Below, piece by piece: positions 8,990 to 18,685 of a stretch of DNA of 20,220 nt (within the stretch, counting starts at the first letter, position 1; each line of letters opens with the position of its first letter). The notes beneath the pieces were generated by a model. The model was not told where the DNA came from. It saw nothing but the letters and a program-made list of their open reading frames with translations, and made no database searches. Where the stretch lies: positions 1-20,220 of the forward strand of contig CDMY01000788.1 in the NCBI GenBank assembly GCA_001179505.1, given 5' to 3'. A program made the position numbers and the translations under genes. The DNA is from Vitrella brassicaformis CCMP3155 (lineage: Eukaryota > Protista > Chromerida).

Positions 8990-11900
8990 AACCTGTCTGT
9001 TGGTCTGGTCCTGAAGCCTTTTGCCCATGTCAGTCAGTCTGTCTGTCTGTCTGTCTATACACCCGTACGCATGTACGCACCACAATTTCATTTCGTTCGG
9101 ATCAGCCAGCCAGCCAGCCAGCCGGCCACTGTGGACGTAAATACCCATCCCTACCGACTCACTCGCCGCCATCCCATCCACTCACTCTTTGTCACCAACA
9201 ACCAATACACCGTCATATAGATATGGAGAGAGAGGGAGGTAGATACGGACACCATATCCACCGACACGGATACCTATAGATCTCTAGGTAAGGCAGGGGG
9301 GCACCAACACGTATACATGCATGGACACGTACAGTCATTACATACACTTAGAGACACACACATACGCGCACACGCACGCACACACGAACGATTGAATGAA
9401 TGAATGGAGGTCTGGGCTCCATGAACGAACAGCCAGACAGACAGACAGACAGACAGACAGGTAGGATTAGATAGGTTGGTTGACACGTAGATGTTAGCAA
9501 GCACGGATTAGATAGGTGCATGGCATGGCATACACTGACACACATACACACATACATACATGTGTATATGAAGTAGTAGTATGTATGCACATTTCCTTCC
9601 TTCCTCTTTTCCACAGTGAACACCACACCAAAAACACATATACAGATCCATCGACCATATCCAGCCATGTGTACTCATCCATCCATCCATCGTCAGTGTC
9701 GGTCGGCATACAGCCAGCCACATCGACCAACCAATCAACGCGCAGTAAGTATTCACACACAGCCAGCCAGCCAGCCAGCCCTCTCTCTCCATCTATCTAT
9801 GGTCTATACACAAGTAGGGGTGGGCACGCAAAGAGAGCCAGACAGACAGACAGAGGGGGTGAGGTGGGCAACCAATCAATCAAATGAGACGGCAAAAATC
9901 AAAGCGCCGCCGTGGATATACTGATGTGACATGATCTGATGTGACGTCTTCTTCCTTCCTTGCTGCTTCCTTGCTCCCCGCCGATGGACGATGGACGATC
10001 GATGGACGGACCACAAACAAATAGAGAGAGTTCATACCATACACGGATATAGTATATACACCTCAGTCCCGCTGCCCCCCCCCCCCCCCCCNNNNNNNNN
10101 NNNNNNNNNNNNNNNNNNNNNNNNNNNNNNNNNNNNNNNNNNNNNNNNNNNNNNNNNNNNNNNNNNNNNNNNNNNNNNNNNNNNNNNNNNNNNNNNNNNN
10201 NNNNNNNNNNNNNNNNNNNNNNNNNNNNNNNNNNNNNNNNNNNNNNNNNNNNNNNNNNNNNNNNNNNNNNNNNNNNNNNNNNNNNNNNNNNNNNNNNNNN
10301 NNNNNNNNNNNNNNNNNNNNNNNNNNNNNNNNNNNNNNNNNNNNNNNNNNNNNNNNNNNNNNNNNNNNNNNNNNNNNNNNNNNNNNNNNNNCCCCCCTCC
10401 CTCCCCTCCCCCACAGGCCTACATAAGTGAGTAATGGAGATGATGGAGATGGTGGAGATGGTACAGAGACATGAAAGGGGGCAAAAACGACACACACGAG
10501 ACAGACAGACAAGAATGAATGATCACACGGACACCAACACGCCAGGCCCACATGCACCGACAGAACCAGACCTTATTTATCTATGCGTTTATGAATGGCC
10601 CCGACCAACATAACATAGCCAGCCGTGTGTGTTGCATCGGTCCTCAAACGCGCAAATAAACACCGGTCGGTCGATGAGATGAAGAGCATAACATTGGAAC
10701 GTATTGACAGACAAAACAAACACCGAAATGAAAGGGGAGAGACAGATGACAGACAGACAGACAGGCAGCAGGGCTACGGAAGCTTTGCACCGATAGGCAG
10801 ATGCACATAGGTACATGTATGTGTATGCATGGTATGCAGTCAGTCACGGGTAAGCAAGCGCAAACACACACACACACACACACCACCACACATCGTGTGG
10901 ATTGGATGCTTGGCCAGAGTGTCTCTGCGTGTGCACGCACGCAGCTTCAAAGAAAACATGAATGAAAGAAACGAAGAGTGGATATAGGAAGGAAGGCAAG
11001 CAAGAACCAAGGGAAGCTAAAGAAAACCCCCCTCTCTCTTCTGCCCTCTCCCCTCATATGTAGAAACTTTTATCAATCAAACACCATACATAACATACAC
11101 TCACTGTCGTGTGTTCTCAACCGTCCCTGTCTCGGTGTCTCGGTGTGTGTGTGTGTCGTGTGTCTGTTGGTGTGTCGGTCCACTGGCTCGGCTATCACCG
11201 ATTCAACCCAGCAGACAGACAGACACGCACACAGACACACGCACAGACACGCAGGCAGACGAACAGGCAGACAGGCAGACAGACAGACAGACATGTAGCA
11301 CAAAATTTAAATATACATATGAGCGAGCAGTGCGGGCAGCATCGGTCGGTGTGGCGGCGGGAGGGTGTGATGGGTGCGGTGCCATGCATGAAAGGAATGC
11401 AGCCACGGAGCCAGCCATGAGCCATGAGCCATGAAGACCACCACCAAGTCAGAGTGCAAATGAATTATAAAGCATTTGTGTGTAGGCCATTCAGGCAGCC
11501 AGGCAGCCAGGCAGGCAGCCAGGCAACCAGTACTAGGTATGGCGATACAAAGCGAGATATATCGATACTCAGTGTCTGATGAATACAAGCAGCACACAGA
11601 CACACACACACACAGAGCGGGCAAACATCAAGACAGCCGGGCAAACAACCATATATCGTTCCATGAGGAAAAAGGTCCGGGCAGCATCACATCAGCAGTA
11701 GGTAGGCATGGAGCCATGTGTGTGTGTGTGTGTCTGTGTATATGTGTGTGTGTGTGTGTGGTGTGTATGAGAGTGGCTGGTGTTATGAATAAAACTTCCG
11801 ACGGCGGAACAAATATGGCGAAGATGGCAGGCAGCCAGGCAGCCAGGCAGACAGACAGACAGGCAGACACGCAACCAACAGACGGGCAGACGGGCAGGCA

Positions 11901-12322: not shown

Positions 12323-15241
12323 TCAGCGGGTCTGCCTCCCGCCCTTCCCGCCACCATGGTTCCCCTGCAGGCCCCCGCCCCTGCCCCCGCCCATGCTCGT
12401 CTCCGACCGCGTCGAATCCGTGTCCCACCTGGGGCTCAAACACACCGCCTCCGTCTTGCCGCTCCCGCCACGAGCGCTGAACGGCGGCGGACCGACCTCG
12501 CTGCTGCCGCTGCTGCTGCGACCTGTCGATGATGACGACGCACTGCTCGCCATGCTCTCGGCATGGGACGGTGGGGCGGCTGGTGGGGCGATTGTGAGTG
12601 TGGGAGGGGTGGGGGCGGGGGGGATGGGGCCGGGGGCCTCTAACACAGGGAGGCTGGGCGGGGGCGGGGGGGAGGGGGTGGCTGTCAGGGTGGGGGTGAC
12701 GATGCTGCTGGCGCTGCTGCTCATGGCGCTCCCGGTTGTGGTGGGCAATGTGGCCATGCTCGGGGCCGTCGTGATCGCGGCCTGACTCTGACTCGGTGTC
12801 GGCTGGGGGATCGGCATCGGTGGCGGCGGGGGCGGCTGTTGCTGCTGCTGCTGCTGTTGTTGTTGTTCGGGCATCGGGAGGTCAGTGCTGAACAAGTCCT
12901 TGTCCTTGGGCGAGGTCTTGCGGAGGCTGCCCGACACCCTGTTGGCCGTGAAGGCCATGGTGGGCCCGACGATGTTGTCTTGTATGCAGGGCTGCGGCGA
13001 GGAGGGGTAGTTGGATGGGGTGGAGATGGGCGTGCCGCACACACAGATGGCATGCTGTCTCGGGAAGGGGCTGCCGGTCTCGGCGGGCGTCAGGGGGTTG
13101 GTGCTGCGGCCGTGACGGGCCCGCCGCCGCTTCCGTGACGCGCCGCCACACATGCCGACTCCGCGACCATACGCACGCCGCCGTGTGCACCAACAGTAGA
13201 GCAGACGCTTGAAACACACACTGCAGCCAAGAAGCGGAGAAGGTGTCTCACAAACTTGTCTGTCTGTCTGTCTGTCTGATGGCTGTGTGTGTGTTTAGTT
13301 ACCTGATGAGAGGCAGTAGGAAAAATGCCGCGAGTGTGGCTCCGACGAGCCAAGCCCAGAGGGGTATGGAGTAGGGGGGTTTGGTGATGCAGGTGCCCTC
13401 CTTGCAGAGCCATCCCGCGTTGAGGCAGTAGAGGCCCGCGTGACGGAAGATCGCAGGCGCGCTGTGCAGGTGATCCACATACTGATAACCCGTGCACTGG
13501 ATGAACCGATGAATGAATGAATGAATGAACGAAAGAATGCGCGCACGACACGCCCACATTGCCCCTTTCTCTTGTGTGTGTGTGTGCTTCTCGTCTCGGT
13601 GGCTCACTTGGTCGTTTTGGTAGCCGGGATCGTGCAGCTCGAAGACCTGGCAGACGTCTGACGCCATGCAGTACTCAGCACACTGCTTAAAATTCCCCCG
13701 CCGCCCGTCATCCTCGACGTCCACCACAAACACGGGATCGAAGCCTCCCGCCCTGACGCCCCACCAGGGCAGCGGCACGATGTGCTCTAGCTGACCCAGC
13801 ACCATCGATGGGTCGTACCAACGGCCGGACGCCTGTGCACACAGGTCCTTGATGGTCGAGTTGGTCAGCGGCTTCCGGAGCGCCACTGACGCCGACGGGG
13901 CACCCGACAGCTCGGGGATCGACGAGGCCATCACTGAGAGAAACAAACAAGACAGAGGAGAGAAAGAAAGGCGTGTGTGTTTGCTGTCTGTCGCTCTGAG
14001 TGCGTTGTAACGTCTGTTTGGCTGGCTGGCTGACCGGTGAGGTTGACCATCGAGACCTTGAGAGGCGTCTCGTAGCCCTCCTCGCCGTCCACGGACACCC
14101 GGAAGGATCCCGACATCGGCAGGACGTCCATCTTGACAGAGTCCAGGCGGCCCGAGTCGACCGTCGGCAGAGGGGGGTCCTCGCTGGCCTCACACTTGGG
14201 CGACACCTCAAAGACGAGGTACGACTGCCCCAACCCCGGCTGCACGAGGTGCACGTTCTCCCTTGCAAAGTCGGCGTAGTTGATGTCGAAGGTGTGGGTC
14301 TCCACCAGCCATTTGTTGGCGTCCAGCTCGGGGTCGTCGAATGTGTCCTCCCACCGCTTGACAAAAGTGCGATTGGCGGTGTCGTAGTCGTACACGCGCA
14401 CCCAGTCGACGTAGGAGAAGGAGTGGTCCTGCCTGCGGCCGGCTGTGCGGTCCGTCCCGTCGATGTGGCTGTCGTACACACCCGCCCATGCCTCGGCGGC
14501 GTCGAAGGTGTTGAAGTTGAGGGGCCAGAGGTTGAACCGCAGGAACATGGCCTCGGTGAAGGTGCTGATGGCGTCGAGGCAGCCGAACATTTCGGCGTCA
14601 TGGAGAGATAAGTCGCCCCCCGCCACATACTCCGACACCAGCTCCCCGACATGCCGCCGCTTGCCCTCGTCTGCGCAGGTCGTCTCGACGCGCAGAGGGC
14701 GTTTGTCGAGGTACCATGCGACGTAGTCAGGCGTCCAGTCGATAGTGAAGATGTGGAACTGCTTCTTGATGAAGGCCGACTGGGAGTCGCTGTCATACAG
14801 CACCCCCGGGGCGGCGTAGTACTTTTCGGCGAGCTGCCTGTGCGTGACGTTGCCGGTGATGATGGTGGTCTGGATGGGGTCCTGGGTGTAGTGGCCCTTG
14901 CCGTGGATCTCGTAGTCGATCTCCTGCCAGGGGGCCGTGAGGTCCATGTGGCCGACCTCATACAGGTCCTTGTAGAGGAAAAAGGCGCTGATGGTGCCCT
15001 CAGTCTCGGTGCCCACCATTATGTTGGCTTCGAACCGGCCGTACGTGAACTTCTCAACCGAACTGATCTCGCCTGCCGAATACGGCTTGGTGCACTCGTC
15101 GCAACACGGGTAGCTGCTGCCGCTGCCTTTGCCTTTGTCCTTGCTCTCGCCTTTGTCGTCTGACGCCTCCTCCTCCTGGCACACGCCCGACATGAGGAGG
15201 GCCGCCAGGCAGACGAGCTTCATTCGCGCCGTGGTCTTCAT
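12323..15241 (-). CDS. Type-I membrane protein: signal peptide, GH16 beta-glucanase (lichenase-like, circularly permuted), PAN/Apple-like Cys module, TM helix, low-complexity tail; complement(join(12323..13220,13303..13496,13608..13933,14035..15241)), 874 aa (868 from ATG 15223)
   Basis: GH16 motifs: YSAGEISSVEKFTYGRFEANI, GTISAFFLY, WQEIDYEIHGK (ExDxE at 14923-14909), FHIFTIDWTPDYVAWYLD, LRFNLW, YVDWVRVYDY, WEDTFD..W..TFD. Hydrophobic N-terminus MKLVCLAALLMSGVC. TM segment PLWAWLVGATLAAFFLLPLISVCF is followed by KR..RRR. Three GT-AG introns in phases 1, 0, 2; total 2625 nt. Confidence 0.88.

Positions 15242-15480: not shown

Positions 15481-18685
<3,205 letters not shown>

What the first reader, a model, noticed from the sequence alone, without database searches (positions are those of the whole stretch)
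14205..15085. Circularly permuted, Fibrobacter-type GH16 lichenase in an alveolate, encoded in one uninterrupted exon (HGT candidate)
Seen: the domain starts at YSAGEI..YGRFEA, reaches WQEIDYE within about 55 aa, and places WEDTFD..DANKW..HTFDINYADFARENV after the DWVRVY strand. Known: in Bacillus-type GH16 lichenases that W-x-D-x-F-D...W block is N-terminal. The reversed order is the natural circular permutation of the Fibrobacter succinogenes 1,3-1,4-beta-glucanase. From memory, its motifs (FSGAEL, GKFEARM, TVSSMFLY, WVEVDIE, QSNIITG, WTPNYVRW, LRFNLW, NWVKVY, WTDNFD, WTFD) match these one-to-one, including QTTIITG. The catalytic ExDxE is intact. The whole domain lies in a 1207-nt exon, the longest in a window where most exons are 50-400 nt. 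Inference: bacterial origin, later fitted with eukaryotic membrane modules by 3' intron-bearing exons.
Basis: partly seen in the sequence, partly recalled or inferred. Interest (0 to 1): 0.72.

Follow-up and report, generated by a model that had tools for sequence, protein, structure and literature searches.

The report
Permuted bacterial-type glucanase gene in Vitrella
The alga Vitrella brassicaformis, a photosynthetic relative of malaria-type parasites, has an intact four-exon gene for a membrane-anchored beta-glucanase with the rare "circularly permuted" chain order first seen in the rumen bacterium Fibrobacter; it is a further member of a Vitrella gene family, probably of old bacterial origin, that this scan has reported several times before.

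Summary
Minus-strand exon 15241..14035 encodes a signal peptide and a GH16 domain (Pfam E 8.6e-18). This domain aligns collinearly, end to end, with the Fibrobacter succinogenes 1,3-1,4-beta-glucanase. The AlphaFold model (pLDDT 89) matches that enzyme best (TM 0.82-0.87). It matches engineered permuted Bacillus enzymes next, and natural Bacillus enzymes only partly (TM about 0.5). The Glu-Asp-Glu catalytic residues and 15 of 19 other compared positions are kept.

The window is a Vitrella brassicaformis contig. The product is the public 874-aa protein CEM33550.1, annotated only as "GH16 domain-containing".

- Permuted GH16 is a large bacterial family spanning at least eight phyla.
- Ten Vitrella paralogue clusters form one clade (100/99), so any transfer predates the expansion.
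- The donor is unresolved and is not specifically Fibrobacter.
- Paralogues carry introns inside the domain, so the single exon says nothing about recency.

I also found a second eukaryotic permuted-GH16 clade in marine protists with a ciliate-like genetic code. A common origin with Vitrella is not rejected (AU p 0.22).

Expression of this copy and its substrate are untested. The scan has already reported this family on other DNA of this genome. Interest is modest.

The parts
14035..15241 (-). Exon 1 (1207 nt): start codon, signal peptide, the whole GH16 domain and a linker of about 55 aa
   Evidence: ORF; exact match to residues 1-402 of public protein P0004/CEM33550.1; GT donor at 14034
15179..15241 (-). 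Predicted signal peptide (MKTTARMKLVCLAALLMSGVC, residues 1-21), followed by an acidic, Lys/Gly-rich spacer
   Evidence: Read from the sequence; hydrophobic core followed by small residues. No predictor was run, so this is an inference
14201..15088 (-). Circularly permuted GH16 beta-jelly-roll domain (residues about 52-347)
   Evidence: Pfam PF00722; collinear PDB alignment to the F. succinogenes enzyme; AF2 pLDDT 89.3; Foldseek TM 0.82-0.87 to 1mve/3axd/1zm1
14909..14923 (-). Catalytic motif E107-I-D109-Y-E111 (EXDXE, no beta-bulge). It corresponds to E56/D58/E60 of the Fibrobacter enzyme
   Evidence: Columns E60/D62/E64 are at least 90% conserved in 128 sequences; residue map
14201..14353 (-). 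C-terminal segment WEDTFD...DANKW...HTFD...YLVFEV (residues 297-347). This segment is N-terminal in Bacillus-type GH16
   Evidence: this query segment maps upstream of the catalytic segment in non-permuted proteins
13934..14034 (-). Intron 1 (101 nt, GT..AG, phase 1)
13608..13933 (-). Exon 2 (326 nt): stalk and first half of a Cys-rich PAN/Apple-like module
   Evidence: Residues 403-511 of P0004; Pfam PAN_4 E 0.005, 17.3 bits against a cut-off of 27; BLASTP E 7e-4 to the module of paralogue P0154, with the Cys pattern kept
13497..13607 (-). Intron 2 (111 nt, GT..AG)
13303..13496 (-). Exon 3 (194 nt): second half of the PAN-like module and the TM helix
   Evidence: Residues 512-575 of P0004
13305..13367 (-). 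Transmembrane helix IPLWAWLVGATLAAFFLLPLI (residues 555-575), followed by a basic, Cys-rich juxtamembrane stretch. This implies type I topology with the GH16 domain outside the cell
   Evidence: Read from the sequence; the topology is inferred from the positive-inside rule
13221..13302 (-). Intron 3 (82 nt, GT..AG)
12323..13220 (-). Exon 4: low-complexity cytoplasmic tail of about 299 aa rich in Pro, Ser, Gln and Ala, plus the stop codon
   Evidence: Residues 576-874 of P0004; no Pfam family

Best explanation
This is an intact four-exon nuclear gene of Vitrella brassicaformis (public protein CEM33550.1, 874 aa). It encodes a type I membrane protein with these parts in order:
- a signal peptide;
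- an extracellular GH16 beta-jelly-roll domain with the natural circular permutation first described for the Fibrobacter succinogenes 1,3-1,4-beta-glucanase;
- a stalk with a divergent PAN/Apple-like Cys module;
- one TM helix;
- a disordered cytoplasmic tail.

Shown: the fold, the chain order, the intact Glu107/Asp109/Glu111 catalytic residues, and conservation of 15 of 19 other compared positions, most of them glucan-binding residues of the Fibrobacter enzyme.

Inferred: it is a retaining endo-beta-glucanase, or possibly a transglycosylase, working by double displacement. Glu107 would be the nucleophile and Glu111 the acid/base. It would be held at the cell surface and would cut or remodel a beta-1,3-1,4- or related beta-glucan of the alga's own multilayered wall, or of material in contact with it.

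Evolution (inferred): the permuted GH16 gene entered the Vitrella lineage from a bacterium before the family expanded to at least 10 paralogue clusters. It then acquired introns, host GC content, lineage-specific loops (a Cys-Cys loop) and fusions to PAN, C-type lectin, trefoil and TM modules. The donor lineage cannot be named.
For: - Identity and splice model: exact match of P0004 to four window segments with GT..AG introns.
- Family: Pfam 64.8 bits.
- Permutation: collinear alignment with 1mve/3axd and reversed segment order against non-permuted GH16.
- Fold: AF2 pLDDT 89.3, pTM 0.89. The top 9 Foldseek hits are all the F. succinogenes enzyme (E about 1e-22, TMt 0.82-0.87). Engineered permuted Bacillus 1cpn/1cpm follow (TMt 0.82-0.83), and natural Bacillus 1gbg reaches only about 0.50.
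- Active site: E58, F88, Y90, E95, W105, E107, D109, E111, Q124, E139, W169, R235, N237, W239, W252, W297, W311 and T317 are all retained.
- Bacterial breadth: 391 confirmed loci in Fibrobacterota, Bacteroidota, Pseudomonadota, Myxococcota, Verrucomicrobiota, Ignavibacteriota and Fidelibacterota, plus Treponema (Spirochaetota), all at 25-32% identity.
- Eukaryote side: only Vitrella proteins reach E<=1e-30 among 1.84 billion representatives.
- Phylogeny: ten Vitrella sequences form one clade at 100/99.
- Not contamination: three spliceosomal introns, host-like GC of about 0.61, and paralogues with introns inside the domain.
- Substrate context: mixed-linkage glucan has been reported in a dinoflagellate wall (PMC7997180). 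Vitrella also carries a bacterial-like expansin (bioRxiv 10.1101/637728).
Against: - The tree does not place Vitrella robustly inside any bacterial clade (55/34). A tree with all 52 permuted bacterial rows monophyletic is not rejected (AU p 0.255). The HGT direction therefore rests on taxon distribution rather than on nesting.
- A second eukaryotic permuted clade exists in marine protists with TAA/TAG as sense codons. It may share an origin with Vitrella (AU p 0.224).
- Four subsite residues differ from the Fibrobacter enzyme: N44D, N72T (unique to this copy), Q81R and W203H. There are also two copy-specific loop insertions. Lichenase specificity is therefore not assured.
- No transcript contig or transcript-derived ORF was found for this copy, although paralogues have them.
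Confidence: 0.7

Rival explanations
1. Old eukaryotic (alveolate-wide) gene. The permuted GH16 was already present in an early alveolate, through one very ancient transfer or vertical descent. It survives in Vitrella and in ciliate-like marine protists and was lost elsewhere.
For: More than 100 clusters of permuted GH16 lie on TARA Oceans and other marine contigs. If TAA/TAG are read as sense codons, these contigs hold ORFs of 1500-1650 codons whose tails are conserved between two contigs. Monophyly of this clade with Vitrella is not rejected (AU p 0.224).
Against: In the best tree the marine clade sits with Ignavibacteriota and Fidelibacterota (91/82), apart from Vitrella. No Chromera, apicomplexan, dinoflagellate or other named eukaryote appeared among the top hits or in the profile search. 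The marine clade lacks the Vitrella-specific Cys loop and insertions (P0114 and P0073 sequences compared with the Vitrella rows).
Confidence: 0.15
2. Binding module rather than enzyme. The domain works as a surface beta-glucan receptor or lectin with little or no turnover.
For: Three paralogues have lost the acid/base Glu: P0024 has Q, P0070 has A and P0088 has T. The family is fused to adhesion-type PAN and C-type lectin modules. This copy has N72T and W203H in the cleft.
Against: This copy keeps the nucleophile, the Asp and the acid/base, and 15 of 19 other compared positions. H at position 203 also occurs in bacterial homologues.
Confidence: 0.12
3. Bacterial contamination or assembly artefact on the Vitrella contig.
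For: The closest non-Vitrella relatives are all bacterial. The contig has a 300-N gap at 10092-10391.
Against: The gene has three GT..AG introns and shares its reading frame with eukaryotic-type modules. Its GC matches its neighbours. Nine further paralogue clusters lie on other Vitrella contigs of up to 614 kb. Identity to any bacterium is only about 30%. The gap is 1.9 kb away from the gene.
Confidence: 0.01

Closest known systems
Fibrobacter succinogenes 1,3-1,4-beta-D-glucanase (lichenase; PDB 1MVE, 1ZM1, 3AXD, 3H0O, 3HR9, 2R49)
   Same: GH16 jelly roll with the same natural circular permutation; full-length collinear alignment; EXDXE catalytic strand; E11, F40, Y42, E47, W54, Q70, E85, R137, N139, W141 and W148 equivalents conserved.
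   Different: Only about 26% identity. Four changed cleft residues: N44D, N72T, Q81R, W203H. It has Vitrella-clade insertions (a segment of about 10 aa after E139, a Cys-Cys loop, WAEHW-type residues) plus two copy-specific insertions of about 22 and 11 aa. It is eukaryotic, spliced and membrane-anchored, with a PAN-like module in place of the bacterial C-terminal repeats. It is not phylogenetically nested in Fibrobacterota.
Bacillus-type lichenases (GH16_21; PDB 1GBG, 3O5S, 1MAC) and their engineered circular permutants (1CPN, 1CPM)
   Same: Same fold and EXDXE motif. The engineered permutants superpose over nearly their whole length (TMt 0.82-0.83).
   Different: Natural Bacillus enzymes have the WxDxFD segment at the N-terminus. 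Order-dependent alignment therefore covers only part of the chain (TMt about 0.5; q53-188 to chain 58-170).
Vitrella brassicaformis paralogues (CEM01690, CEM31690, CEM35486, CEM35548, CEL97707, CEM38970, CEM17572/A0A7S1PDF3, CEM00455, CEM00815)
   Same: Same permuted GH16 with the clade-specific N-terminal Cys and Cys-Cys loop; one clade at 100/99; frequent fusion to PAN modules.
   Different: Identity is 26-40% to this copy. Paralogues vary from secreted 349-aa forms to a 2016-aa PAN and C-type-lectin protein. Three lack the acid/base Glu. Some have introns inside the domain, whereas this copy has none there.
Plant EG16/XTH and fungal Crh GH16 wall-remodelling enzymes
   Same: Eukaryotic EXDXE-type GH16 enzymes acting on the organism's own wall glucans. 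This is a functional analogy for the proposed role (PMC6827312).
   Different: They are non-permuted, belong to different subfamilies and give only weak structural matches (TMt 0.36-0.56). There is no evidence of common descent beyond the GH16 family.

Membership tests
Glycoside hydrolase family 16 (Pfam PF00722) | Profile score above the curated gathering threshold | tested here: met
   64.8 bits against a cut-off of 22, E 8.6e-18
Glycoside hydrolase family 16 (Pfam PF00722) | Beta-jelly-roll fold | tested here: met
   AF2 pLDDT 89.3 with a strand-rich model; 131 PDB matches at E<=0.001, and the 50 listed are all GH16 structures
Glycoside hydrolase family 16 (Pfam PF00722) | Catalytic E-x-D-x(-x)-E motif on one strand | tested here: met
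   E107-I-D109-Y-E111; these columns are at least 90% conserved in 128 homologues
Naturally permuted (Fibrobacter-type) GH16 beta-glucanases | Catalytic strand precedes the WxDxFD...W segment; full-length collinearity with the F. succinogenes enzyme | tested here: met
   Two collinear HMMER stretches; reversed order against non-permuted proteins; Foldseek TMt 0.82-0.87 over about 305 columns
Naturally permuted (Fibrobacter-type) GH16 beta-glucanases | Conserved glucan-binding cleft residues of the characterised enzyme | tested here: inconclusive
   18 of 22 mapped positions are identical; N44D, N72T, Q81R and W203H differ. Residue roles are taken from PDB entry titles and my own recollection of the F. 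succinogenes papers.
Naturally permuted (Fibrobacter-type) GH16 beta-glucanases | Strict endo-hydrolysis of beta-1,4 bonds next to beta-1,3 links (EC 3.2.1.73) | not testable with these tools
   Needs an enzyme assay
CAZy subfamily GH16_21 (licheninases) | Assignment by the CAZy/dbCAN subfamily HMM | not testable with these tools
   No dbCAN library is available here. Indirect evidence only: an EXDXE motif without a beta-bulge, as in GH16_20/21 (PMC6827312), and NCBIfam BglS as the best but far sub-threshold hit (49.9 bits against a cut-off of 300).
PAN/Apple domain (Pfam PF14295/PF00024) for the downstream module | Profile score above the gathering threshold | tested here: not met
   PAN_4 scores 17.3 bits against a cut-off of 27, E 0.005, on the exon-2 piece. 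There is no PAN hit on the whole protein at E<=0.01. Homology to a paralogue's Cys module is weak (E 7e-4). I therefore call it 'PAN-like' only.

The most novel reading that the evidence does not exclude
Vitrella and an abundant group of marine protists that read TAA/TAG as sense codons (probably ciliates) inherited the permuted GH16 from one ancient acquisition in early alveolates. They use surface-anchored versions of it to remodel an endogenous mixed-linkage beta-glucan wall or cyst layer. This would be an alveolate counterpart of the plant XTH/EG16 system.
Probability: 0.1. Interest if true: 0.6.

Novelty: new member of a known kind. Interest (0 to 1): 0.35.

Why it matters
Natural circular permutation of GH16 is a textbook case known from a rumen bacterium. 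This work shows three things. The permuted form is a large, multi-phylum bacterial family. It has been domesticated as a gene family of at least 10 members in a chromerid alga, where it is spliced, fused to adhesion modules and membrane-anchored. A second protist lineage also carries it.

For chromerid and apicomplexan biology, it points to an unstudied beta-glucan component of the Vitrella wall and to bacterial genes as a source of wall-remodelling tools. For this particular window the gain is small. The protein is already public, though its record does not mention the permutation, and the scan has already described sister genes.

Tried and rejected
- Transcript contigs: two exact exon-1 patterns searched in metagenome contigs found nothing. 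The 298-aa domain search found no transcript-derived ORF for this copy. This is a weak negative. I ran no positive control for the collection.
- The search for related loci with the 128-row alignment failed because no stretch was conserved enough. It worked with 14 rows.
- Donor identification failed. The backbone is unresolved, and both AU tests are non-significant (p 0.224 and 0.255).
- Outgroup choice: two 'non-permuted' outgroup candidates, P0048 and P0153, fell inside the permuted clade. P0048 is probably a truncated tandem protein. I dropped both. For the remaining outgroup rows I moved the N-terminal segment behind the rest of the chain, in a script, for alignment only.
- The last profile word search returned few hits and did not list the Vitrella paralogues themselves. 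It adds little to the case for absence.
- The apparent AT-rich island at 9.5-11 kb is a 300-N scaffold gap.
- PAN assignment by Pfam is below threshold.
For the spliced product I used the stored public protein P0004 by reference.
Full report
**What is there**

The finding lies on the minus strand. ORF 15241..13931 (436 aa) starts with a signal-peptide-like MKTTARMKLVCLAALLMSGVC and contains a GH16 domain (Pfam PF00722, 64.8 bits against a cut-off of 22, residues 53-192).

An exact look-up shows that the window is a complete 20,220-bp contig of Vitrella brassicaformis CCMP3155. The gene product is the public protein CEM33550.1 / A0A0G4GT18 (874 aa), named only 'GH16 domain-containing protein'.

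I mapped that protein back on the window (read). This gives four exons, all with GT..AG introns of 101, 111 and 82 nt:
- 15241..14035 (1207 nt)
- 13933..13608
- 13496..13303
- 13220..12323

The stored public protein was used by reference.

**Circular permutation**

By sequence:
- phmmer against all PDB chains ranks the truncated F. succinogenes 1,3-1,4-beta-glucanase first (3axd, 3h0o, 1mve, 1zm1, 3hr9, 2r49; E 1e-17 to 1e-19).
- The match is two collinear stretches that together span the domain: q52-184 to chain 5-120, and q225-331 to chain 127-218.
- Bacillus-type lichenases match only q53-188, to chain positions about 58-170.
- In the few non-permuted proteins among the database hits, the query's residues 245-285 map upstream of its residues 4-141.
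- The NCBIfam BglS profile matches the query's first residues only from profile position 79.

By structure:
- An AlphaFold2 model built on a 128-row alignment has mean pLDDT 89.3 and pTM 0.89.
- The nine best Foldseek matches are all the Fibrobacter enzyme (E about 1e-22, TM by target 0.82-0.87, about 305 aligned columns).
- The engineered circularly permuted Bacillus hybrids 1cpn and 1cpm follow (TMt 0.82-0.83).
- Natural Bacillus enzymes reach only TMt about 0.5.

The permuted topology is therefore established as far as prediction allows.

**Active site**

I used the numbering of 1MVE. It is recovered from the printed alignment, and V18, F40, E85 and W203 match the mutant names in the PDB titles. 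The residues line up as follows:
- The nucleophile, Asp and acid/base are kept as E107, D109 and E111.
- E11, F40, Y42, E47, W54, Q70, E85, W105, R137, N139, W141, W148, W186, W198 and T204 also have identical counterparts.
- Four positions differ: N44D, N72T (unique to this copy among the sequences compared), Q81R (common in the family) and W203H (shared with several bacterial homologues).

The motif is EXDXE without a beta-bulge. This is the lichenase/XTH type (PMC6827312).

Compared with bacterial members, the Vitrella clade has shared insertions that include a Cys-Cys loop. This copy has two further insertions of about 22 and 11 residues. These are the low-confidence parts of the model.

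**Rest of the protein**

- Exons 2-3 encode a stalk and a Cys-rich module. It resembles PAN/Apple but does not pass Pfam's threshold (PAN_4 17.3 bits against 27). It aligns weakly to the corresponding module of a paralogue with the Cys pattern conserved (E 7e-4).
- A TM helix follows (residues 555-575), then a basic, Cys-rich stretch.
- The last part is a low-complexity tail of about 299 aa with no family match.

The inferred topology is type I, with the enzyme outside the cell.

**Distribution and origin**

An exhaustive HMMER search of 1.84 billion cluster representatives gave 381 hits at E<=1e-3. Only four reached E<=1e-30, and all four are Vitrella. Look-ups identified ten Vitrella paralogue clusters at 26-40% identity. 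Several carry PAN, C-type lectin or trefoil domains.

Nearly all other top hits are collinear, meaning permuted, and look bacterial. A scan of one genome per prokaryotic species confirmed 391 loci. These fall in:
- Fibrobacterota
- Bacteroidota
- Pseudomonadota (Cellvibrio and relatives)
- Myxococcota (Sorangium)
- Verrucomicrobiota
- Ignavibacteriota
- Fidelibacterota

Treponema (Spirochaetota) was seen separately in the protein search. All of these share 25-32% identity with this protein.

I built a careful ML tree (72 rows, LG+C20+F+G4 PMSF). It was rooted with four non-permuted GH16 sequences whose N-terminal segment I moved, in a script, for alignment only. The results were:
- The ten Vitrella sequences form one clade (100/99).
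- This copy lies in a six-member subclade (100/99), weakly sister to CEM01690.
- The position of the Vitrella clade among the bacteria is unresolved (55/34). It is not inside Fibrobacterota.
- A tree holding all 52 permuted bacterial rows together is not rejected (AU p 0.255).

Bacterial origin is therefore the economical reading of the distribution. It is not proven by nesting, and no donor can be named.

The transfer is old:
- It predates the family expansion.
- The gene's GC content matches its neighbours.
- Paralogues have spliceosomal introns inside the domain: CEM01690 after residues 297 and 385, and CEM31690 after residue 275.

The uninterrupted exon of this copy is therefore not a sign of recent arrival.

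**A second eukaryotic clade**

Two unnamed hits, P0114 and P0073, led to more than 100 clusters of close relatives on short marine contigs, including TARA Oceans scaffolds. On these contigs the GH16 reading frame continues through many in-frame TAA and TAG codons but no TGA. This gives 1537-1648-codon ORFs, and their tails are conserved between two independent contigs. It indicates a nuclear code with TAA/TAG as sense codons, as in ciliates.

These proteins are also permuted. In the best tree they form a 100/100 clade next to Ignavibacteriota and Fidelibacterota (91/82), apart from Vitrella. However, forcing them together with Vitrella is not rejected (AU p 0.224).

It keeps an older, possibly alveolate-wide, origin alive at low probability.

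**Function**

The chemistry is inferred from the family: a retaining double-displacement mechanism with E107 and E111. The substrate is not known.

A wall-remodelling role on a mixed-linkage or related beta-glucan is plausible for four reasons:
- The enzyme is tethered outside the cell.
- The family is expanded and fused to carbohydrate or adhesion modules.
- Mixed-linkage glucan has been reported in a dinoflagellate wall (Nevo and Sharon 1969, as cited in PMC7997180).
- Vitrella also holds a bacterial-like expansin (bioRxiv 10.1101/637728).

Three paralogues have lost the acid/base Glu, so part of the family probably binds rather than cuts. This copy looks catalytically competent.

**Limits**

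- Two exon-1 patterns found no transcript contig, and no transcript-derived ORF of this copy was found. Paralogues do have such contigs. Expression of this copy is therefore untested.
- I found no paper that mentions both Vitrella and GH16, or Vitrella together with HGT of glycoside hydrolases beyond the expansin preprint.

**Earlier notes from this scan**

Notes on other DNA of this genome already describe the same family. I verified the following from those notes:
- the organism;
- the 2016-aa member;
- the loss of the acid/base Glu in some copies;
- introns in paralogues.

**Verdict**

This is a new member of a known kind, and the interest is modest.

Noticed in passing
L080 1-1906; L085 143-5086; L088 236-4846 (marine/TARA contigs, not the window): A large environmental clade (more than 100 clusters at 90% identity) of permuted GH16 proteins. 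In-frame TAA/TAG codons are evidently read as sense, a ciliate-like code. The GH16 domain is the N-terminal tip of proteins of 1500-1650 codons rich in His, Asp, Glu, Pro and Lys, and their tails are conserved between independent contigs.
   Followed up: partly
P0009 (Chitinispirillales, 440 aa); also P0079 and P0133: These bacterial proteins carry two or three permuted GH16 units in tandem. P0009 has an N-part, a C-part and then a second N-part. This is the kind of tandem intermediate expected under the duplication model of circular permutation.
   Followed up: no
Vitrella paralogues P0024 (CEL97707), P0070 (CEM00455), P0088 (CEM00815): The acid/base Glu of the EXDXE motif is replaced by Q, A and T respectively, while the nucleophile and the Asp are kept. 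These are probably non-hydrolytic, glucan-binding copies.
   Followed up: partly
window 10092-10391: A run of 300 N (scaffold gap), preceded by a poly-C tract. It explains the apparent GC dip and skew at 9.5-11 kb in the composition profile.
   Followed up: yes
window 15930-16706 (+ strand): The neighbouring gene on the other strand looks like a 2-isopropylmalate synthase homologue ([12 protein letters not shown] motif in the ORF). It is transcribed divergently from the GH16 gene, with about 690 bp between the two ORF starts.
   Followed up: no
window 13540-13600, 13260-13300, 15690-15730: Introns and intergenic DNA around the gene carry short CA/GT and (CAGA)n / (TTCA)n microsatellite runs.
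   Followed up: no
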